Shown here piece after piece: positions 46,037 through 63,579 of a DNA stretch of 64,000 nt. Position numbers and translations under genes: made by a program. The DNA is taken from NCBI GenBank assembly GCA_051294905.1, contig CM119375.1:17980001-18044000 (forward strand), in the 5' to 3' direction. The stretch comes from Botryllus schlosseri. Its lineage: Eukaryota. The notes beneath the pieces were generated by a model. That model saw only the letters and a list, made by a program, of their open reading frames with translations, did no database searches and was not told the origin of the DNA. How positions within the stretch are numbered: position 1 is the first letter of the stretch; each line of letters opens with the position of its first letter.

Positions 46037-47992
46037 CAGGGTTGTAATGACTCGAGTCACGATTTTTTTGGGACTCGACTTGACTCGAGTCATTTTCTTG
46101 AAATGGGAGTCATTACGCATGACTCGACCCAAGTCATTGACTCGGCTTATTATATATGACTTGTAGATGAAGAAATTTGCGAATCGTAATGTCTAGATCA
46201 ACGCATCTGACGAATTCTGCCGACATCGCTATTTGTCACCACTGCTTTCGTTGCACTCTTCTTATATCAGATATGCCGCCGGGAAAACAACAGACAATGG
46301 TACATAGTAGCAATGCATTGTACAAAATCATCGAGTGATGAAGAGGTAATAGTTCATCCGCAATCAAAGTACTCAAGACTTTTCAATTATACAAGCAAAC
46401 AGTCGAAGCAAAGTTCAATTAGAGCCAATGAAATGACTCAGATGGTCAAGTACTTGGAGGAGACTGATAAGCTCATGTGTAGATTTAAAGGCGATGATTC
46501 TTTATATTTTTGGGCGACTAGAAAGAATGAGTTACCAATGCTCTTAAGTGTGGTTCAAAAATGCTTGTCAATACCTGCATCTAGTGAACCAGTGGAACGT
46601 GTATTCAGTAGATGTGGATGTATTCTAAGGTCATGCCGCTTTAGCATATCTGAGGATCTCCTTTCCACTTTAGTATTTTTGAAGTGTAGGCTACCTCATT
46701 GATTTGATCTGCTGTCTGTGAGAACACACAATACCCTCCGTCCATTTGACGTTTTGTTAGGTATGTGCATTGTGCAGGTGAGTAATAATGAATGGCTAAT
46801 GTTTGTACAATAGGGCTGTTCAAACATGACTTATTTTTATTTTACTGGGTGGCTACTTGATAAAATTGTTATGTTGAATAAAAAGAACACTGAATCTGGC
46901 CTAATTTTAAAACGTATAGAATCAATGATATGAGAGGAGAAAATTTTGGATTTGAAAATAAATGGGGTATTTTTAGTGAGAAATTCTTTCATATAATATA
47001 ATTACAATCTAGTAGTAAGCCGACTATTTTTTCATATCCAAAATATTCCACTCTAATAACTTCGCTTCTTCTAGTTGGAATTGAGCCAAATTTGCTATGA
47101 ATCATATTTCACACAATCTAACAATATCATGAGGCAGCCGGTAAAATTACAAAATCTCTATTTGCAATTGATCCAAAATTTCCTCTCAAAGCATTGCTTT
47201 CTACTGGTTGTAATTGAGCCAAAAAAGTTTTTTTAGGCAATCTAGCAATTTTAAGAAGTAGCCTCGTTTTTGCGATTTTGCCCTCTTTTTCTGAGAATTT
47301 TTGTTAAATTTAGGGCAAATTCGACTAAGACACAGTAAATTAGCACTGAAGTAACGCTCCGGCGGCTATTTTGGGAACTGAGCAGGAAAGTTGACCTTTT
47401 TTTAGTCAACCACCTGATAATGTGAAAGAAAAACTGTACCTCTGCATAAACATGCATCTGTTGATTCTATATCAGCTGGTAGACGTGAATTCGTTGGTTC
47501 TCTATAAGCTATTTGTAAGCTGTCGTCGATGTGCTCGTAATAAAAACTGAATGTTTGTATTTGTGATGGATCAGACTGAAAAGACTGATATTTTAATAAA
47601 AGTTCTAAGATTAGTAATGTTATCATATTGGCGGCCTGTCTCGTCTATTTGTAGCATCGGTAAATGCGGCCAGGAACTGTCCGTTATCTGTCTAAATAAA
47701 CATGTGCCAAGACTCTGATTGGGACAAAATAAGCATGTTTGGCAAGCAAGGAATTCGATATCACCCAAGCAGGTTTGAAAACATAAGTTGAACATGACTT
47801 CGATACTGTGACTTGGACTTGGACTCGGACTCGAGTCATAACACCATGACTCGGACTTGGCCCTTGAAACGATGACTTGGATTCGGACTCGACTCGGCGA
47901 TGAATTGAAAATGACTCGACTTGACTCGAGTCAAAACCACAAAAGTAAGATTGACTCGTGACTCGGAACCGTGTGACTTGGTTACGACCCTG
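46037..47992 (+). mobile_element. Internally deleted hAT transposon (GACTCGAGTC family)
   Basis: TIRs CAGGGTTGTAA ... GTTACGACCCTG; perfect TSD gagaaaga; carries a hATC-domain ORF; other repeats inserted at about 46810-47430. Confidence 0.92.
46313..46702 (+). pseudogene. hAT C-terminal dimerization domain remnant (129-aa ORF)
   Basis: DSLYFWATRKNELPMLLSVVQKCLSIPASSEPVERVFSRCGCILRSCRFSISEDLLSTLVFLK matches the hATC consensus; no catalytic core present. Confidence 0.88.
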
Positions 47993-54368: not shown

Positions 54369-57300
54369 TCAGTCAGCTGCCCCGAAACATTCCAATTTCC
54401 CCAATGTGTGCCATCCTTTCTCCCCGTCTTCCCCCATATCACCGAAACGCATTTCGGAGACAGGCAATTTAGACTTATCTGTCAGATATCCCTCGTCGGA
54501 TGTCACTGGAGCTGAATTTTTATCGCAATTGCATTTCGTCGACTTGCCCTCGCAAATTCCTGTATTATGAATTGGCATTTTGTTTATCCGATGGTAGAAA
54601 TGGAAGCATCAATACAACTTATATTCGAAGATTTCTCACCCGCTTCGCCACAAGCACAAAATCCAGGTCTCTTTGAAGAAGCCCCTCCCCAATATTCCAT
54701 TTTCTCGCCACTTCTTGACAACCAGTATCCAACGGGATTTCCAATCTCGTAGAGCAAAACAGTAGACAGGCACCTGAACTGGATGGTGACACATGACGTT
54801 ATGATTAGAGCTATTTTTTGACATGTCAAAATAAGTCAAAATTTTGACATAGCGTTAGGTCAAACAATTGTCAATATATTTACGAAGTCAAAATTTTCAC
54901 GTGAAAAGTTGTCAGTTTTCAAGTGAAGAATGTTATTTCAGGCCAAACTACTTCGAAAGGACAGACAGTTCCAACCAGACACGATGATAATTAGTCCAAT
55001 TCTAACATTATGTGGGAAAACACCTATTTAAATACATGAGGTGAGAATTTGGTCAAAGTTCAGTTTTCTAGTGTCAAAAAATGTCAAAATTTTGATTTTG
55101 AGGTCAAAACCTTCCGCCGGTCAAAAAAGTCTCCCTAGTTACAATATTCCGAATAATATTCTTTACACGGTATTTTAATATATATCCTTGGTCGACATAC
55201 GACTTTTCGCATGTAGGAAATGCCACAACGGACTAGAGATCTACATTAAAGTCGGGCGGAGGCTTTTGCACCGGATGTCCTTCCTGCCGCTACCTTATCT
55301 ATTTGTCCATGATTGGGACAGGTGCTGGAATGGTTTGCGCTCGTATAGTTGCTCGGTTTTAGTTTGATAAGCATCTGATGGCATTTGGACCAACGATGTC
55401 AGATCGCAAGACCACTAACTTATGAATGACGGCTGATTGACGGAATTATACTACATCTCTGCATATAAAATTTGTTGCGTGAGGTATACTCGTCGTAGAA
55501 TATGTGGTCTGTGGTTCAGCATTTTTTTCCGATACCATACGGATAAATCCAGCGCTTTATATTACCAATTCTTATTTCACTATACATATTATCTTCGACA
55601 GAAAATATATGTAGAGTGACGGGGAATTGACATTGACCACGTTGTGAAGGCTACACAGAAGGATTTCAAAGCTATACCGTAATTCTTCATATCATTATAA
55701 CATACGTACAGATTGCAAATCCAAAGTGTGATAGATTCATTGTACCTTGATGAATTGCTTGCATTCTCTGGAATTATTCACGGTCTTGACAATTTTATCC
55801 AAACTTATGGAGTACTGAGGCCGATGTGAGTAGCAGCCATGGCTCTCACAACGGGCAGCCTCCTTTTCAACCATGGAGTCGTGCCAGATTTCCGTGACGG
55901 CTGAAAAATTGTGGGACTATGACGAGGCGCAACAAAAACTGCTTCGATGGCGAGCAGTGACTACGAGACAATCGAGCTTATTGACTGATTCAATCTTGAG
56001 TGGGGCATTGGCGGAGAATCAATTTATTTGATGAGCCCCATTATCGGGTTCTTATTGGTTTGGTATCAGTGGTGATTTAACACAATGAAGTTATTGTTAT
56101 TTAAAAATCTTAAACCGTTGACTATGAGACAACACCCCGTGTGCCCCATGTCACGAGCCTAATCACCGACCCGTATCACTCAATCGCGGGTAAAATCTTA
56201 TGGTATTACTTTCAATTTTACTTTGCTTGGATCATTCATAGACATAGACCCGCCTTCAGTTTGATGGTTTATCGAGGAAGCGAGTGACGCAATGTGTTGA
56301 ATGGAAGAAAGCAAGAGTAACAGAAGAGCGAGAGATGGTTAGCATGAAAGTCGTCCATGATACCGAATCAAATAACTTCATCAAATGCATTGTCATGGCG
56401 CACAAGGTCTGAACAGGCGGTAATCACCACAATCTGAGTTGTATTACAATAGTAATAGTATGCTTTGTCGTATATATCACTCACCAAAACCTGGAGATAA
56501 ATTGCAATACACCTGATATTGATCGTCAGGCGTCCCAACTTGATAAAAACCGGATTCGGTGATTCCGTCTCGACGCACCAAATCGTGACAGGTGTATGCA
56601 TCTGTGATTTAGCTTTCAATCAATAAAGGTTTATCTATACGAAGATAGATTTCGTAGGATTCATGACAATTATCCGACATACGCAATATAATAAATACGT
56701 TGTTATCGCGCTGAACTTCCCATTGCAAGAACTCGAAAGCTGTAACAGTTGGCCTTTTCGCTATATCTTCGAGACATAATCCTCATCAAACTGCGTGCAT
56801 GTGCTACCAAAATACGCCGGCCTATTTTAGCATTGCTCCTAAGGACATCAGGGTACATAACGTAGCATTGGGTTCAATTTCCCAATGTATCTCCAGACGA
56901 TCCAAGTGTATAACGTGATCTGTAAAACTGACCCCAATCCTCAAACATCACATGTATTTATTTGAACAGAACGTTCATAACTATATCGAAGGTAACATTC
57001 AAATTTGAGATTCCTAGTCACACATTGCTCGAGCATGTATTTAAAATTTTCCGCAATAAGCGTGTCCCTTGATTGATTGCAATTATGGTGTGATGAAATT
57101 GTTGATTGCAATAAGGTGCCAATATGTAATATGAACATTTGAATATAATTCAACAAATTCCATACCGGGACAATACTGGAATCTCCTAGATGTCCCCAGA
57201 AGGTAATACCCGTAGGTCACGATGTTGTAGTTTGAAGTTAACTGTGCACATGTTGACACACCTTGTGATAAAAACGTAAAACAATATTATTTCTATTCAA

Positions 57301-60300
57301 TTATTACACTGGTCAACACATATTTTAGGCAGACGAAGCAAGAGTGGTTTTGGGGGTTCTGAAGGGCACTGATTCCGAATATAACCTTATAGTTTTTTCA
57401 AATTGGCTCTTGTTTTGGAGATAACCCATGGGGCTATTTTGACCAAAATCTCCTATTTTAGATGTATTCGCTGGATAGAAAATCGGCTCAGTCATACTAT
57501 CAAGTTTAGAAATTCAATCTACTTGTTATTTTTACACACAGAACACTATTTTAAATCAAAATACAGCAATAGAACTGCATTTAGGGGTATTAGATTTATC
57601 ATAGTTATAGACCAGGGGTTCTCAAAGGGTGGGCCACAGGACCATTTGAGGTGGGCCACAGAGCTGTTTGGAATATTGTAGAACTAGTGAAAATTTGGGT
57701 GCATTTGTTATGTTATTCGCTCAAAAATAGATTCGTATTATCAAATTAAACGTAGGCTACCTGACGTTTTTCATCCGACTTTGATGGGACGTAATGGCAC
57801 GTATGGAGTCGAAAATGGGAGGGGAAACGGATGCTTTTATCCCCCGGCTACGACAACCTACGGCTAACGGCAACGAAAATAATTTCGATTATATATTAAC
57901 TTGAAGTAAGTGCTGAAGTGATCAAGTATTCCAGCAGGGCCGTATGCCGTTGAAAGGGGTGTGCATTAGACTCGTACAGAAGTGTAGTTGAGGTAGATTT
58001 ACGGTACCTTTGCAGGTCGTATTATTGTAATATAAAAATAGCCATAATCGCAATTTATTATCAATTCAACTTCCTATCGAAGTATACGGCACCACCGCAA
58101 CCAAGCGTAATGTATTGAGGATTTAGAGCAGTACGCGCATTAATGTTTGGAGTCGGTTTGAAATTTCCGGCCTTGAAATCATTGTACATAATGGAAAAGT
58201 CACATGAAATGATTATACAATCGGATTGAATGTTCTGACAGCGCACTCAGGTAGATACTGGATATACTATATGTACGTTGTACAGCTTGAATATTGAAAT
58301 ATTCTTTCTCCACGTCTGTGCAGTATCCCTTTTACCAAATAATTGTTTGAAACTGTCCAGCCCCAATCTGCACTACAGTGGAAGTAAAACCGCAATCACA
58401 CAGTTGATGCCGGAATTAGATTATTGGGTTTCGCAACATGAGTGGAACAGCGGCCATATTAATGTACACAAGAGTTATACGATCTACCAGGACGGTACCT
58501 GCCGCACTCAAAACCCCCAATTTGGGGGAGCTCAAAGGGGCCCAAATTTCTTTGGTCGTTTGTTTGTTGGAGGAGATTTATTCAACTTGAAAATTTACGT
58601 CGCGCTTTGCGCGATTTCATTACTCTGAAGGTCTACATTTGTAATGATCAGTAAGAGAAAAATGCGCAGATTTTAGAGAAATAGGCATATCGGCGCCAGC
58701 GATGACCATGCCTTGGACGGGACTATGACTCTAGTATAAGAGGTGGGCCACAGAACATTTTCAAACGGGAAAATGGGCCACGGGCAAAGAACGGCTGAGA
58801 ACCCCTGTTATAGACTTTCACGGATATCATGTACGTAAATAAACTCACGCCATGTATATAAGTAGCCTATTTACCTAGTTACTCAAATAACGTGGGATTA
58901 ATTCAATCAGTTTTACGCCAACCACTTCTTGTGAATTTGAAATATTCAGTTGCAATATAATATTATTCATTTATTTTAATGCACAATCGATTTTTGTACG
59001 ATTTTCGCCTGTAAGCATTTTAGTGCAGTTACTCGAAATGTTCCAGCAAAGGTCTGCCATAATATGTTCATCCCATCTGCCCTAATATCTTTCTTTTGTT
59101 TTTTTGATGACTTGGTAGAACCTCTGCTCTTGCTAATCAACAAGATCATTAGGAAATTTATCCAGATGGCTGAACAGGAAGAGAACTTCTATGCTCATAC
59201 TTGTTCCAAGTTTTCCATAGGCAGATACGAATTTTCGGACCAACTGTTTGTAGTTGGGTGCTTTGTGGTCATTTAAAAAGTTTTATTCACTACATCTTAG
59301 GATAAATTCCATGCTGTGAACTCCTTCCTAATATGAAAATTAGAATCTTTCATCCTGATTCGAATCTGAATCCATCAAGGATACCAGATTTAAGCTTCTC
59401 GTTGGATAGGGATAGGCTACTATAGGTAGGGGTGGGCACAATGATTCGAGTACTTGAATCTGGATTGAGTACTCAAATCTGAATCGAGTAATAATTTTAA
59501 TGATTCGAGTCGAGTAGCAAAGGACGATTTTGTCGAGTACTGAAACTATACCCTACTCGCAACTGAAAGATAATTTAATAACGAGAATTATAGTTTTGAT
59601 ACTAATTGTCACTTTTGAAGCCTTGAAACCATGATTCGCCGTATCGTAGCATACGAACAGGTCGAACACATATAGTACAACGCTACGAACGTTACTGGAA
59701 ACAGCACATTTCCGAAGTCATGATCGTCCCACAACATTGTCACCAATTAAAAAGGTATGGCTAAAAAATACCAAAGTATCTTTAATTGTGATGGATAACA
59801 GGCATTGTATTGTTTGTGGTCGCATAAAAGGTACATATTTGAACTTTGACATATTACATTTAGTAATGACGTTATAATGAGTGATACTCGGTTACTCGAT
59901 TCGACTCGAGGCATATTATGTGATTCAGAATCGAATCACTCAGGTACTCGATTTTGCCCAGCCCTAACTATAGGTATACCCACTTTGTGACTCAGCGAAA
60001 AATTATCCATTTTCAAGCCAAAATAAATGAGACGCATGTGAGTATTGTAATTAAGCTTTTCAAGAACAAATTTTACAGCTTTACCTTCCTCTTCAATTTT
60101 GGTAGAATGACCAATTGATACAGGGGAATATGCATTTCCCTTGTGCAAAAGTACAATTTTTAGGCTTGAGAAACTGCTTTTTTGGCAAACAAATATTTTG
60201 CACCAGGTTATGGTAATATTGATATAATGACTGAGACCGACATGAGTGCTCTTCATAGTCAATTATCTATTTATGCGCAGTATAAAATTAGAAAGAAACA

Positions 60301-63300
60301 ACGATTTTCTTCCTATCAAGTGAATTATTCAAGGGTAGTACTCAAGTAATTTTAGGCTTTTTAGGGGTATAGATATCTTCACAACAAGAGCCAATCTGAC
60401 AAAACTAATGTGATATTCGTAATCACCGACCTCGAAAACCCCAGAAACGGCTCTCAGATGTGCTGCCAACAATTTTTTTTCATTTTTTTGACCAGTGTTA
60501 TCAATTGCTTCCCGGCTTGTCGGTCGCAAGAGCCTTCCGATACGGGTCAAACAGCTATTTTTAAAATTATGGGGTTGATAAATAAGAAAGATCTGGAAGG
60601 TCCCAATATACAATTCATATATATGTCATTTACACTAACGTAGATCGCTTTGTAGATTGTACTAGCCTACATGTGACGTATGCTGCAATGCGGCCAATCG
60701 AGGTTTTAAGGCTTCTAGAGTGAAAAATGATTCGAAATTATAATTATCATGGATAGAATAATTCTTAGCGACAAGGAGCGTATAATTTTAGTACTCGGGA
60801 AACTCATCTCTTACTGCTCAACTCGAATCATTAGAATTACAATGTCTACGCAATAGAGCAGTAGTTTTTAAACATTTTAGGCCCCGACCAAAATTTTAGT
60901 TTAGTGGCGTAATGCGACCTAAGCGCTACACGCCAAAATGAATGCATTTTAATATTATTATACTACGGCGTGATGAAGAGAACGCGCGGACGACAGTTGT
61001 GCGCAACGCAGTTCTATAAACATTTATCAGATTGGAAGGACGGAACTGTGCCAGTACCGTCCATTTCTACAACCGAACACATCAATATGCAATCTCAGAA
61101 TCAATATACGCTCGTACGATTGATGCATTATAGCAGGTTACCGCGTTTGGACTTGCAAACTTGATATCATTTCATTTCTTTGAGGGTTCCTCAATAGCCA
61201 TTGCATGAACTTGGACAAAGTTTGGATGGAAAATGCGCGGTACTTATTGACTGGAATCCATGAAGCACTATGTTAATTGTGACATTTTACAAGGTATATT
61301 ACATTGGAAATTTTTTATAAATTGGTTGGAATTTCAGGTACTGTAAAGTACTGTTGACCTATTGCAATTATTGATAATCTACCTGCATATTGTTTAAAAT
61401 CACAGTATATGTATATCGCCTGATTTGCTTCGTAGTAGTTGCCTCTCATCATATAGTAACCTGCTTCGGTAATCCCATGAGAGTCCCTCAACTCAGAGCA
61501 GTTTCCGGTACCTATAGATACAAGACTAAAATACTATATTCCAGCACTTAAAACATGCGGGTCATTACAATTATTGCTTGCAAAGCGGTGAAGATTTGGA
61601 GATCCAAATCGTGTCCTGGAGATTAATGCTTTATGCTTTATGGTGATACGCTCAAGAAGACGAAGATAAACTGAAACAGGCATATGCTGTGTTTGTACAT
61701 GCATATTACATACGCATTACAAAATTTATGCTATGATCCGGGGCGATTTTTCGTCCAGCTATCTGTGGTCGTTGCATGTAATCAGAGCGAGCACTGTATT
61801 GATAAGTCTCGCCACAATCAGCTCCTAGACAGTGATTTGTTCAATGAAGGCGTGCACTCAGCTGACATGATTATTTCGGTTGCATAAGCTATACTATTGT
61901 CCGGCGACTCTGTATGTCTCTTATACTATAACACAAAAAGTAATATTTTCAATATTGTTTATGTAGATGTTCAACGGTTGCAATTTTTAAATATCTTACG
62001 TTGGCAATGTCACCTTCGGTAGCCTACTATAATATCTCCTTTATGGGGTAGGCTAAATCCGGATGATAGAGTCCATTGCATAAATACTGTGATATTGGGA
62101 CGATGCGAACACTCGGTTTCCATTCGTGTTTGGTATGCGAAAATTGGTACTTCTGAGATTCATGATCGCAAAAGAACCTTGGTAGATGCTACTCCGTGTA
62201 CATTATTGTGAAATATCAGCATTATTCCTCAGAATTCCTTGAATTTTAACTTCCTATCACACATGTCATCAAGGTGGATGCAAGAAAAGGAATTCAACCA
62301 TAAAATTTAAACAAAACTAGTAAAACCAACAATGATGGTGATTCTCCGGAGTCGTGCTTCAGATGTCATGCAACGCAGTGAGCTTATTCTGATCCAAATG
62401 CAAAGTATATTGGGGTCCGGTAGTGCATTACTGATCCTGGCGTCAGCGGGTCCACTGAGCAATAGTATGGATGCGATGGCTTTTATGCGCCAAAAACCAA
62501 CACAGAATAATTAAACTTTTACCACCAAGTTGTTATAGGATCAATCCATTTTGTCATGAGTGTCAGTTTTAGAACGACAGCAAGCGTAGGCATACTCAGA
62601 GCAATGACTACAACTCCGGTAATATATGATTCAGATAAGAGGCAGTTCGCAACGCAAAAAGCGATTTTGATATGTTCGTGATCGCATTCGTGTACACTGA
62701 GAACATTTGATAAAAGTTTGGATTTACATTAATCATCCATACCGTGATATATAATTAGGATCTGAAGACCCCCACCAAGCATAATATTCAAGATTGTAAC
62801 CAAGTAAATGGTTCCGGGTCACAAGTCAATAAAATTTCTTTTTTTGTTATGACTCGAGTCAACTCAACACCGAATCAAGTCCGTCTCCTATGGTTGGGGT
62901 GCAAAAAGTCGAGTCCGAGTCACAGTGTTGAGACTCAAGACCGAGTCCAAGTCATAATGTCCACTGACCAGAATCGAGTTCAAATCTCGCTTAACACACT
63001 TTTGTGAAACTCCTGGGTGCATTCACAGTCCTCACATTTATAATGCGAGTCATTCTACATTTTTAAGAAAATGACTCGAGTCGAGTCATGACGTGAGTAG
63101 CCTACTTACAGCCCTGATAATATTATATTGATATAATGTTATGTGTTAAAATCAACATACCTCTCCGTAATATGTCCATTTCTCTCATGTTATCTTTGAC
63201 GTTATTCATTATTTCATATCCACTTTGGTTCAAAGACGATGTAGCACCTGGAAAAGTGTTTTCAAAAGGGCTCTGTATTGGAAATTTAGTTTAGTGGAAT

Positions 63301-63579
63301 GAATAACAATATAATTGGCATCGACGGATAAAATCAATCCTATACCCTACAGCCCAAATAGAATATATGTGTACCTTCCACCATGCCGACGAGATTACGC
63401 TCCAATTCCCTAGACGCATTCCGAGATTCACTTTTCAGCTCTATTAGTGATGATTATTATGTTAGCGATAAATGTCAGCGGGAGGTAGGAGTCCGGGAAA
63501 ATGAACTGCATACCTGCTACGCTATCGATGAGATCTCTTTCCTGTGTTCGCGTCTCTTCAGCTAGCAATTCCTTCAGCT
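54369..63579 (-). CDS. 5'-incomplete gene: coiled-coil exons, three tandem Cys-module exons and a Caspr/COLFI-type fibrinogen-like domain (about 350 aa resolved)
   Basis: complement(join(63514-63579,63375-63440,63161-63247,61383-61511,57166-57261,56485-56601,55746-55900,54640-54778,54369-54559)); all GT-AG and phase-compatible. Domain marks TCHDL...GITESGFY...VYCN, TEIWHDS, CKQFIKFRC, YWLSRSGEKMEYWGG, FCACG, KCNCDKN...DEGYLTDKSKLPVSEMRFGD...TLGKLECFG*. The last four exons are high-confidence; linkage of the upstream exons is inferred; start codon not found. Confidence 0.8.
54806..55137. mobile_element. hAT-type MITE with GTCAAAA arrays
   Basis: TAGAGCTATTTTTTGAC ... GTCAAAAAAGTCTCCCTA; TSD gttatgat/gttacaat (6/8). 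Confidence 0.7.
55230..55430 (-). mobile_element. Probable tRNA-headed SINE fragment with V-SINE-like core
   Basis: Minus strand TAGTGGT...GGTCCAAATGCC (A/B-box-like), then GGCAGGAAGGACATCCGGTGCAAAA, resembling the GGAAGGGCATCCG core; recognised from memory only. Confidence 0.4.
57613..58807. mobile_element. 1.2-kb Buster/Charlie-like non-autonomous hAT in an intron of the fibrinogen-like gene
   Basis: CAGGGGTTCTCA ... TGAGAACCCCTG; perfect TSD ttatagac; GGGCCAC motifs. Confidence 0.92.
59030..60262 (-). pseudogene. DNA transposase relic, probably Chapaev-3 (CMC), interrupted by a hAT MITE
   Basis: Upstream piece SSLKIVLLHKGNAYSPVSIGHS...FVLEKLNYNTH; downstream piece LSNEKLKSGILDG...APNYKQLV...YGKLGTSMSIEVLFLFSHLDKFPNDL...QRFYQVIK...RY*GRWDEHIMADLCW. 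Matches the recalled SLKAVLLH / MSLKxHFLxSHLDxFP / ERFHQDI..ME.RYQG.W...DYCW motifs. Confidence 0.7.
59427..59966. mobile_element. hAT MITE with CGAGTA/GATTCGA arrays
   Basis: TAGGGGTGGGCA ... TGCCCAGCCCTA; perfect TSD actatagg; a related left arm lies at about 18411-18640. Confidence 0.92.
62789..63116. mobile_element. hAT MITE (GACTCGAGTC family)
   Basis: CAAGATTGTAA ... TTACAGCCCTG; perfect TSD ataatatt (62781-62788, 63117-63124). Confidence 0.85.

What the first reader, a model, noticed from the sequence alone, without database searches (positions are those of the whole stretch)
56485..61511. Array of three homologous, frame-interchangeable Cys-module exons ahead of one fibrinogen-like domain: possible splice-diversified recognition protein
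Seen: three separate phase-1/1 exons encode clearly homologous modules: GTGNCSELRDSHGITEAGYYMMRG...IYIYCDF (61383-61511), GVSTCAQLTSNYNIVTYGYYLLG...FQYCP (57166-57261) and DAYTCHDLVRRDGITESGFYQVG...QVYCNL (56485-56601). The rest of the domain (55900-54369) is present only once. Known: C-x2-L-x4-G-x4-G-x-Y...YC is the N-terminal subdomain of fibrinogen-related/COLFI/Caspr-type domains, normally one copy per domain. Inference: any one module, or any subset, splices in frame onto the single C-terminal part. The locus could therefore make alternative versions of the domain (mutually exclusive or cassette exons) or a constitutive beads-on-a-string protein. Either architecture looks unusual, and the gene sits near secreted lectin genes.
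Basis: partly seen in the sequence, partly recalled or inferred. Interest (0 to 1): 0.75.

Follow-up and report, generated by a model that had tools for sequence, protein, structure and literature searches.

The report
Three stacked half-domain repeats, sea-squirt protein
A sea-squirt gene encodes a secreted protein in which the small first piece of a Caspr/collagen-propeptide-type globular domain is repeated three times in a row, and the only transcript found carries all three repeats together, so they are not used as alternatives.

Summary
Three AG/GT-flanked, phase-1/1 exons on the minus strand (61383-61511, 57166-57261, 56485-56601) encode homologous Cys modules: 26-34% identity, z 5.5-6.2 against shuffles. 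One C-terminal part follows.

The splice-diversification reading is not supported here. One 1475-nt transcript contig joins A, B, C and the next exon in series, and it accounts for all exon depth in that run.

The A-B-C order, splice phases and open frames recur in about eight of some eleven paralogues clustered over 0.7 Mb. dN/dS is about 0.1-0.3 for each module type. A transcript-derived protein of a related species and Styela clava RefSeq models carry 2-4 tandem modules. The triplication is therefore old and constitutive.

The last module plus the C-terminal part forms one complete CNTNAP/neurexin-IV-type "fibrinogen-like" domain (Foldseek E 1e-18). Its nearest solved fold is the fibrillar procollagen C-propeptide (Z 14), not fibrinogen (Z 4.4). 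Modules A and B are extra copies of the N-terminal subdomain.

The predicted product is 376 aa: signal peptide, coiled coil, three modules, head.

One Styela RefSeq isoform skips exactly one module exon, so minor cassette use remains possible. No other note of this scan covers this family. It is an undescribed variant of a known domain, of moderate interest.

The parts
63514..63579 (-). Predicted coiled-coil exon cc1 (66 nt, phase 1/1), encoding ELKELLAEETRTQERDLIDSVA
   Evidence: AG/GT flanks and frame continuity. Conserved in two paralogues. Not covered by the reads laid, so its inclusion is inferred.
63375..63440 (-). Predicted coiled-coil exon cc2 (66 nt, phase 1/1), a tandem duplicate of cc1
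   Evidence: AG/GT flanks and frame continuity. Paralogue conservation. Inclusion is inferred.
63161..63247 (-). Predicted exon cc3 (87 nt, phase 1/1), encoding GATSSLNQSGYEIMNNVKDNMREMDILRR.
   Evidence: It is 59-68% identical at the protein level in paralogues. Inclusion is inferred from phase and from contig length arithmetic.
61383..61511 (-). Module A exon (129 nt, phase 1/1): first copy of the N-terminal Cys subdomain
   Evidence: Present in the spliced X1 contig. Weak COLFI hit, E 0.013, profile positions 32-69. A-type exons occur in 13 other places.
57166..57261 (-). Module B exon (96 nt, phase 1/1): second copy
   Evidence: Present in the spliced X1 contig. B-type exons occur in 9 other places.
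56485..56601 (-). Module C exon (117 nt, phase 1/1): third copy, the true N-terminal subdomain of the complete head domain
   Evidence: Present in the spliced X1 contig. In the relative P0162 the CNTNAP match starts at this module, residues 131-326.
55746..55900 (-). Exon D (155 nt, phase 1 in, 0 out): first exon of the single C-terminal part
   Evidence: Present in the spliced X1 contig.
54640..54778 (-). Exon E (139 nt), carrying YWGG...CACG
   Evidence: Homology to P0014 and P0162.
54369..54559 (-). Exon F with the stop codon, carrying CNCD...LPV..FGD...LGKLEC
   Evidence: It found 618 relatives at E<=0.001 and 16 paralogous exons in the genome.

Best explanation
This is one minus-strand gene of an ascidian (sea squirt). 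It encodes a secreted protein of about 376 aa. The parts are a signal peptide (exon 1 lies outside the window), about 75 aa of coiled coil from three small phase-1 exons, three tandem disulfide-closed modules (A, B, C), and a single globular head.

Module C together with exons D-F makes one complete CNTNAP/neurexin-IV-type 'fibrinogen-like' domain, whose fold is that of the fibrillar procollagen C-propeptide. Modules A and B are extra copies of that domain's N-terminal subdomain. In a relative's model each is predicted as helix plus two strands.

The three module exons are spliced constitutively in series. This is shown for one transcript. The array arose by old tandem exon duplication, before the family expanded into a cluster of about 11 genes and before the split from the Styela lineage.

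Inferred, not shown: the coiled coil (replaced or joined by a short collagen triple helix in paralogues) oligomerises the chains. Modules A and B would then form a stiff stalk or an added binding surface that holds the head away from the oligomerisation region, as in other stalk-and-head secreted matrix or recognition proteins.
For: Splicing. X1 contig record 1 (1475 nt, depth 9.35) covers 55746-55900, 56485-56601, 57166-57259 and 61381-61513 as consecutive record positions 510-1008. All three joints have CT..AC ends, which is GT..AG on the minus strand. Bin depths over the exons equal what this one contig contributes, so no second contig covers them. The contig length fits the predicted mRNA: 1131 nt of coding sequence plus untranslated ends.

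Gene model. All splice sites are canonical, the frame is unbroken and the product is 376 aa.

Conservation. A-, B- and C-type exons occur in the same order next to about eight paralogous heads on C5:18.03-18.71 Mb. They keep AG/GT and phase 1/1. dN/dS is about 0.1-0.3 for each type in unsaturated comparisons. Modules group by position together with Styela modules.

Relatives. P0162 is a 326-aa protein from a 1528-nt contig of another species, at most 73% identical to this genome. It has a signal peptide and A-B-C in tandem. Styela clava RefSeq proteins carry 2, 3 or 4 modules.

Fold, from the model of P0162 (pLDDT 83, pTM 0.75). The best matches are CNTNAP2 residues 596-793 and neurexin-4, E 1e-18, 27-33% identity, over model residues 131-326. 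Procollagen C-propeptides score Z 14.0 with rmsd 3.8 over 182 residues, while fibrin scores Z 4.4. Each module shows the same helix-strand-strand pattern.

The module profile matches the N-terminal segments of fibrinogen gamma, FGL1, angiopoietin-like proteins, tenascin and collagen I/III propeptides.
Against: Only one run gave a spliced contig, and contigs drop rare isoforms. Two bulk RNA runs read as raw reads had no reads on the exons, so there are no junction counts.

The 5' exons (cc1-cc3 and exon 1) are predicted, not seen in reads.

A RefSeq isoform of a two-module Styela gene skips exactly one module exon, so skipping can occur in the family.

Oligomerisation is not shown. The trimer prediction gave no verdict.

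This gene has no collagen stretch, unlike paralogues and Styela members.

The structure model is of a 54%-identical relative, not of this protein.
Confidence: 0.7

Rival explanations
1. Regulated cassette or mutually exclusive use. Transcripts with one or two of the modules are made in some tissues or after challenge. They would give heads with different N-terminal subdomains or stalks of different length.
For: All three exons are phase 1/1 with lengths divisible by three, so every subset is in frame. Styela clava RefSeq lists XP_077965822.1 and XP_039259675.1, which lack exactly the 41 aa of the second module. That stretch is one 123-nt AG/GT exon in the Styela locus.
Against: The only transcript found here has all three modules, and no other contig covers the exons. 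The relative's transcript-derived proteins P0162 and P0014 also carry them in tandem. The introns between the modules are 564 and 4121 nt, so steric exclusion cannot apply, and inclusion of all three keeps the frame, so nothing enforces exclusivity. The Styela isoform is an automatic model whose read support I could not check.
Confidence: 0.2
2. Modules A and/or B are decaying pseudo-exons or belong to another transcript, and the real gene has a single module.
For: Some paralogues do have degenerate copies. One A-type copy has lost its first Cys and its AG, one orphan A-type exon has no AG, and one whole copy carries stop codons.
Against: Both exons are in the spliced contig. They are open with canonical sites. 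Both are under purifying selection among paralogues, dN/dS 0.13-0.48.
Confidence: 0.03
3. The spliced contig comes from a processed retrocopy in DNA, or from a close paralogue, and not from mRNA of this locus.
For: Run X1 is labelled RNA only by a guess, and it also holds intronic pieces.
Against: Genome searches with each exon and with P0162 find only exon-by-exon matches and no contiguous intronless copy. The contig differs from the window by 2-3 letters per exon, far closer than the nearest paralogue, which is 84% identical at the protein level in module C.
Confidence: 0.03

Closest known systems
Fibrinogen-like domain of contactin-associated proteins (Caspr/CNTNAP1-5), Drosophila neurexin-4, C. 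elegans nlr-1, axotactin
   Same: Module C plus the C-terminal part aligns over its full length with CNTNAP2 596-793 and its relatives. This was measured on the relative P0162, residues 131-326: E 1e-18, 27-33% identity. The motifs YWGG, CACG, CNCD and LPV..FGD are shared.
   Different: Caspr proteins are about 1300-aa transmembrane proteins with discoidin, laminin-G and EGF domains and one N-terminal subdomain per domain. This protein is a 376-aa secreted product with a coiled coil and three copies of the subdomain.
Fibrillar procollagen C-propeptide (COLFI, PF01410; PDB 4AE2, 5K31, 6FZW)
   Same: It is the nearest solved fold: Z 13.5-14.0, rmsd 3.8 over about 182 residues. The modules give weak COLFI hits at profile positions 28-74. 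Paralogues and Styela members have a collagen triple helix and a coiled coil just upstream, as procollagens do.
   Different: Pfam scores are below the curated cut-off: 13.8-23.6 against 26.2 bits. This gene has no Gly-X-Y run. Trimerisation was not shown. COLFI domains have one base region, not three.
Fibrinogen-related domain proteins (fibrinogen gamma, FGL1, angiopoietin-like, tenascin, ficolins, snail FREPs)
   Same: The family profile matches their N-terminal A subdomain, the C..L..G..G.Y...YC motif, at E 2e-7 to 6e-3. The overall layout is also shared: an oligomerising stalk and a globular head.
   Different: There is no Fibrinogen_C hit at E<=1. The whole-domain fold match is weak: Foldseek E 0.02, Z 4.4.
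Styela clava RefSeq models named contactin-associated protein-like 4/5, neurexin-4-like, collagen alpha-1(XI)-like or uncharacterized (e.g. XP_039248885.1, XP_039258580.1, XP_039259674.2)
   Same: They belong to the same family: 40-45% identity over the aligned length, 1-4 tandem modules before one head, and module exons in phase 1/1.
   Different: Most carry a short collagen stretch that this gene lacks. They are automatic predictions named by best hit. I found no paper describing the tandem-module layout.
Tandem arrays of alternatively used exons (Dscam-type mutually exclusive exons, tandem duplicated exon substitution)
   Same: Homologous, same-phase exons stand in a row.
   Different: Here the exons are co-included in one mRNA. 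The introns are long, and no feature enforces exclusivity.

Membership tests
CNTNAP/neurexin-IV-type fibrinogen-like domain | Full-length structural and sequence match to the domain of CNTNAP proteins | tested here: met
   The model of relative P0162, residues 131-326, matches CNTNAP2 596-793 at E 1.1e-18 and 31% identity. Twenty-four CNTNAP, neurexin-4, nlr-1 and axotactin rows rank above the collagens. The window protein is 54% identical to P0162.
CNTNAP/neurexin-IV-type fibrinogen-like domain | Conserved Cys framework and the motifs YWGG, CACG, CNCD and LPV..FGD | tested here: met
   All are present in exons E and F. The corresponding columns are invariant or nearly so in a 53-sequence alignment.
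Caspr/CNTNAP proteins (whole-protein membership) | Discoidin, laminin-G and EGF domains and a transmembrane segment around the domain | tested here: not met
   The predicted product is 376 aa and ends 3 residues after the domain. Pfam finds none of those domains in the pieces or in relatives.
COLFI (PF01410) | Pfam score at or above the gathering cut-off (26.2 bits) | tested here: not met
   Module A scores 15.3 bits, module C 13.8, P0162 16.5 and P0038 23.6. Only a coral relative, P0183, reaches 27.4.
COLFI (PF01410) | Fold of the procollagen C-propeptide | tested here: met
   Z 14.0, rmsd 3.8 and 182 aligned residues with 4ae2_C. The next unrelated fold scores Z 7.2. Foldseek E 1e-7, probability 1.0.
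COLFI (PF01410) | Position directly after a collagen triple helix, and trimer formation | tested here: inconclusive
   There is no Gly-X-Y run in the gene or in the first 10 kb upstream, and no paralogue-type collagen-bearing first exon within 30 kb upstream. Paralogues and Styela members do have one. The homotrimer prediction gave no verdict.
Fibrinogen-related domain (PF00147) | Fibrinogen_C profile match over the domain | tested here: not met
   No hit at E<=10 on the exon pieces or at E<=1 on four relatives. Only the N-terminal subdomain matches by profile. Whole-fold Z is 4.4.
Alternatively spliced tandem exon array | Transcripts that carry one exon, or a subset, of the array | tested here: not met
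   The only transcript contig carries all three, and no other contig covers the exons. Raw-read runs had no coverage, so minor isoforms remain untested.

The most novel reading that the evidence does not exclude
The three modules may be interchangeable partners for the single head. Occasional exon skipping could achieve this, as modelled for one Styela gene. So could competition or swapping between chains of an oligomer, with different modules docking onto the head. Across a cluster of about 11 fast-diverging paralogues this would give a combinatorially varied recognition surface in a sea-squirt humoral or self/non-self recognition system.
Probability: 0.1. Interest if true: 0.75.

Novelty: new variant of a known kind. 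Interest (0 to 1): 0.4.

Why it matters
It shows that the roughly 35-aa N-terminal subdomain shared by fibrinogen-related, Caspr-type and procollagen C-propeptide domains can be copied on its own, as a phase-1 exon, and kept for a long time as a separate bead. That implies it is an autonomous, disulfide-closed folding unit.

It also defines an unstudied, locally expanded ascidian family of secreted stalk-and-head proteins that databases currently mislabel as contactin-associated proteins, neurexin-4 or collagen XI. For genome annotation, the practical point is that these homologous exons should be modelled in series and not as alternatives.

Tried and rejected
Alternative splicing at this locus.

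Homotrimer prediction of P0162 residues 45-326 in three copies. Score 0.00, no verdict, so it counts neither for nor against.

Collagen exons. There is no run of four or more Gly-X-Y triplets on the minus strand of the window or in the first 10 kb upstream.

First exon. No exon like the signal-peptide/CNVV/collagen first exon of paralogues 5 and 11 lies within 30 kb upstream. A different candidate exon 1 was found by paralogue conservation.

Lectin neighbours. No listed C-type-lectin hit lies in the window. Pfam on the eight longest ORFs gave only a hAT transposase remnant.

Rfam: nothing in the window.

Exact look-up of the Styela skipped isoform's locus failed. The full isoform's locus was used instead.

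Literature searches found no description of this architecture. CTHRC1, another short-collagen protein, was considered and dropped because its head is C1q-like.

The spliced protein of this window could not be submitted for folding or for length-matched database search, because it has no single reference. The relative P0162 served as a proxy.
Full report
OBSERVATION

Each is preceded by AG and followed by GT. The lengths are 129, 96 and 117 nt, and all three exons enter and leave in phase 1.

The pairwise similarity is modest, at 26-34% identity, but well above chance. Local alignment scores are 40-49 against shuffle means of about 20, giving z 5.5-6.2, and at most 1 of 2000 shuffles reaches the observed score. 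A six-frame motif scan found no further copy in the window.

The remainder of the domain occurs once, split into exons 55746-55900, 54640-54778 and 54369-54559, the last of which includes the stop codon.

ARE THE MODULES ALTERNATIVES OR USED TOGETHER?

I laid four runs on window 55700-61600, a 5901-letter stretch within the operators' limit.

- In run X1, one 1475-nt contig (depth 9.35) covers 55746-55900, 56485-56601, 57166-57259 and 61381-61513 as consecutive record positions 510-1008.
- Its three joints (55900/56485, 56601/57166 and 57259/61381, the last with a 2-base ambiguity) all have CT..AC ends on the plus strand. That is GT..AG on the coding strand.
- All three modules and the next exon therefore sit in series in one spliced molecule.
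- The depth in each exon bin (7.17, 5.41, 4.46, 5.03) is what this single contig contributes. No second contig covers these exons in X1.
- The contig differs from the window by 2-3 letters per exon. It is therefore an allele of this locus, not a paralogue, since the nearest paralogue is 84% identical at the protein level in module C.
- No intronless copy exists in the genome, so a retrocopy is unlikely.
- Runs X7 and X11 (bulk RNA, raw reads) placed no reads on the exons. The gene is silent or very low there, and junction counts were impossible.
- X2 holds only unspliced pieces.

It is met as far as the data go, but the data are one contig from one run.

CONSERVATION OF THE THREE-MODULE LAYOUT

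The window is G000:C5:17980001-18044000. The last exon has 16 relatives in the genome, 10 of them on C5 between 18.10 and 18.67 Mb.

Searches with each module separately find A-type, B-type and C-type exons. Each is most similar to its own type. They lie in the order A-B-C next to about eight of these heads, for example at 18.277-18.279, 18.334-18.345, 18.498-18.500, 18.534-18.537 and 18.643-18.655 Mb. The copies keep AG/GT and phase 1/1 at the same positions.

There is also decay:

- A whole copy at 18510489-18515702 carries stop codons.
- One A-type exon has lost its first Cys and its AG.
- One orphan A-type exon has no AG.
- One partial C-type copy exists.

Nei-Gojobori dN/dS between this gene and its two closest paralogues is 0.26 for A, 0.27 for B and 0.18 for C. 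Other unsaturated pairs give 0.1-0.25. The counts are small, and the youngest pair gives higher, noisy values. All three module types therefore evolve as coding sequence.

A tree of 66 modules has only 31 columns and is weakly resolved. It groups modules by position, not by gene or species. Last modules of this genome and of Styela form one group (91/95), first and middle modules form another (95/93), and middle modules of three-module Styela proteins join the B type (99/79). The triplication thus predates both the local gene expansion and the split from the Styela lineage.

THE FAMILY

A search with the last exon against 1.84 billion representatives found 618 relatives. The nearest named ones are Styela clava, Clavelina lepadiformis and Ciona intestinalis RefSeq proteins. 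They carry best-hit names such as contactin-associated protein-like 4/5, neurexin-4-like, collagen alpha-1(XI)-like, EGF and laminin G domain-containing protein-like, or uncharacterized. The genome is therefore an ascidian's.

The shared layout is: signal peptide, a CNVV..CG motif, usually a short collagen Gly-X-Y stretch, a coiled-coil linker, then one to four modules and one head.

- Styela proteins have two, three or four modules.
- Clavelina and Ciona mostly have one.
- P0162 (326 aa, from a 1528-nt contig) has a signal peptide, no collagen, and A-B-C in tandem. It is at most 73% identical to anything in this genome, so it comes from another species. It is an independent transcript-level example.
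- A brittle-star protein also shows two adjacent modules. Subdomain duplication may therefore have happened more than once.

WHAT THE DOMAIN IS

Pfam gives only sub-threshold COLFI hits on modules A and C (E 0.013 and 0.037, profile positions 30-69 of 233). It gives no Fibrinogen_C hit.

An AlphaFold2 model of P0162 was built with a 53-sequence family alignment. It has mean pLDDT 83 and pTM 0.75, with the head above 94. Each module shows the same pattern of an 8-residue helix followed by two strands.

| Library | Best match | Score |
|---|---|---|
| Reviewed UniProt models | CNTNAP2 596-793, neurexin-4, CNTNAP1-5, nlr-1, axotactin; model residues 131-326 | E 1e-18 to 4e-12, 22-33% identity |
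| Reviewed UniProt models | Fibrillar collagens | E 1e-9 to 1e-7 |
| Solved structures | Procollagen C-propeptides (4AE2, 5K31, 6FZW) | Foldseek E 1e-7; Z 13.5-14.0, rmsd 3.8, about 182 residues |
| Solved structures | Fibrinogen | E 0.02; Z 4.4 |

Model residues 131-326 are module C plus the C-terminal part.

A sequence profile of the family matches only the N-terminal subdomains of fibrinogen gamma, FGL1, angiopoietin-like proteins and tenascin, and the equivalent part of collagen I/III propeptides.

In short, module C plus exons D-F is one complete Caspr-type domain with a COLFI fold. Modules A and B are supernumerary copies of its first subdomain. That subdomain is the one piece shared with true fibrinogen-related domains.

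GENE MODEL

Upstream of module A lie three small phase-1/1 exons that encode heptad-like, charged sequence: 63161-63247, 63375-63440 and 63514-63579. The last two are duplicates of each other. They are conserved next to the A-type exon of the closest paralogue.

A candidate first exon lies 9 kb further upstream, outside the window, at L003:8394-8478 on the minus strand. It encodes MVAVLFIATLALFVLLVSLDSRSNIQDN, has a phase-1 GT donor, and is conserved upstream of two paralogues.

Joining all ten exons gives an unbroken 376-aa frame with canonical sites throughout. The coding length of 1131 nt plus about 160-180 nt at each end matches the 1475-nt contig, which has 509 nt downstream of exon D and 467 nt upstream of exon A. 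The 5' part is nevertheless predicted, not observed.

Unlike paralogues 5 and 11, whose first exon ends in GPPGKRGPIGP, this gene shows no collagen stretch.

MECHANISM

- **Shown:** the three module exons are co-spliced, the layout is old and under constraint, and the head is a Caspr/COLFI-type domain.
- **Inferred:** the product is secreted. This rests on the signal peptide in the candidate exon 1 and in relatives.
- **Inferred:** the coiled coil, or the collagen helix in relatives, brings several chains together. Modules A and B act as a disulfide-stabilised stalk or an extra binding surface between that region and the head.

The homotrimer prediction gave no verdict and carries no weight either way. 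The ligand and the biological role are unknown. A matrix/tunic role or a humoral recognition role are the obvious candidates, by analogy with other stalk-and-head proteins.

WHAT REMAINS OF THE SPLICE-DIVERSIFICATION IDEA

The arithmetic is right: any subset of the modules is in frame. In Styela clava, two RefSeq releases list an isoform of a two-module gene that lacks exactly the second module (XP_039259675.1, XP_077965822.1). In the Styela locus those 41 residues are one 123-nt AG/GT phase-1/1 exon.

A head built with the "wrong" module is therefore at least modelled in a relative. I could not check the read support for that model. At this locus the introns are 564 and 4121 nt, and co-inclusion keeps the frame, so nothing enforces exclusivity. 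I put regulated alternative use at about 0.2 and the wider combinatorial-recognition reading at about 0.1.

NOVELTY AND SCORE

The domain and its relatives are known. The tandem-module proteins already sit in RefSeq as automatic models with misleading names. Three literature searches found no description of the repeated subdomain or of this ascidian family.

I class it as a new variant of a known kind. A structural or evolutionary biologist would find the autonomous duplication of a sub-domain and the clustered expansion worth a note, but it is not a major surprise. Interest 0.4.

Noticed in passing
window 59246-60033: A repeat inside the A-B intron has contig depths in the thousands in X1 and X2. 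It draws many partly fitting reads with varied loose ends in both bulk RNA runs. It is probably a high-copy, transcribed transposable element.
   Followed up: no
window 46313-46699 (+): This ORF matches the hAT-family C-terminal dimerisation region (PF05699, E 5e-8). It is a transposase remnant.
   Followed up: no
window 63375-63440 and 63514-63579 (-): Two 66-nt phase-1/1 exons, both starting AGCTGAA, encode similar charged heptad-like peptides. This is a second tandem exon duplication in the same gene, in the coiled-coil part.
   Followed up: partly
G000:C5:18510489-18515702 (loci L012, L018, L033): A complete A-B-C module set with in-frame stop codons in all three module exons. It is a pseudogene copy inside the paralogue cluster.
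   Followed up: partly
G000:C5:18238347-18238478 and 18252379-18252907: In paralogue 4 a collagen-type first exon lies 6 kb upstream of the A-type exon, and the coiled-coil exons lie a further 14 kb upstream. Either two alternative 5' ends exist or a remnant of another gene is present. The 5' ends of this family vary between collagen and coiled coil.
   Followed up: no
L049:5012-5134 (Styela clava, OZ123513.1): The 123-nt second-module exon is exactly what RefSeq isoforms XP_077965822.1 and XP_039259675.1 leave out. The intron between the two module exons there is only about 90 nt.
   Followed up: partly
P0013 residues 192-279 (Amphiura filiformis XP_072037188.1): Two adjacent N-subdomain-like modules occur in a brittle-star multi-domain protein. 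This suggests that subdomain duplication also happened outside tunicates.
   Followed up: no
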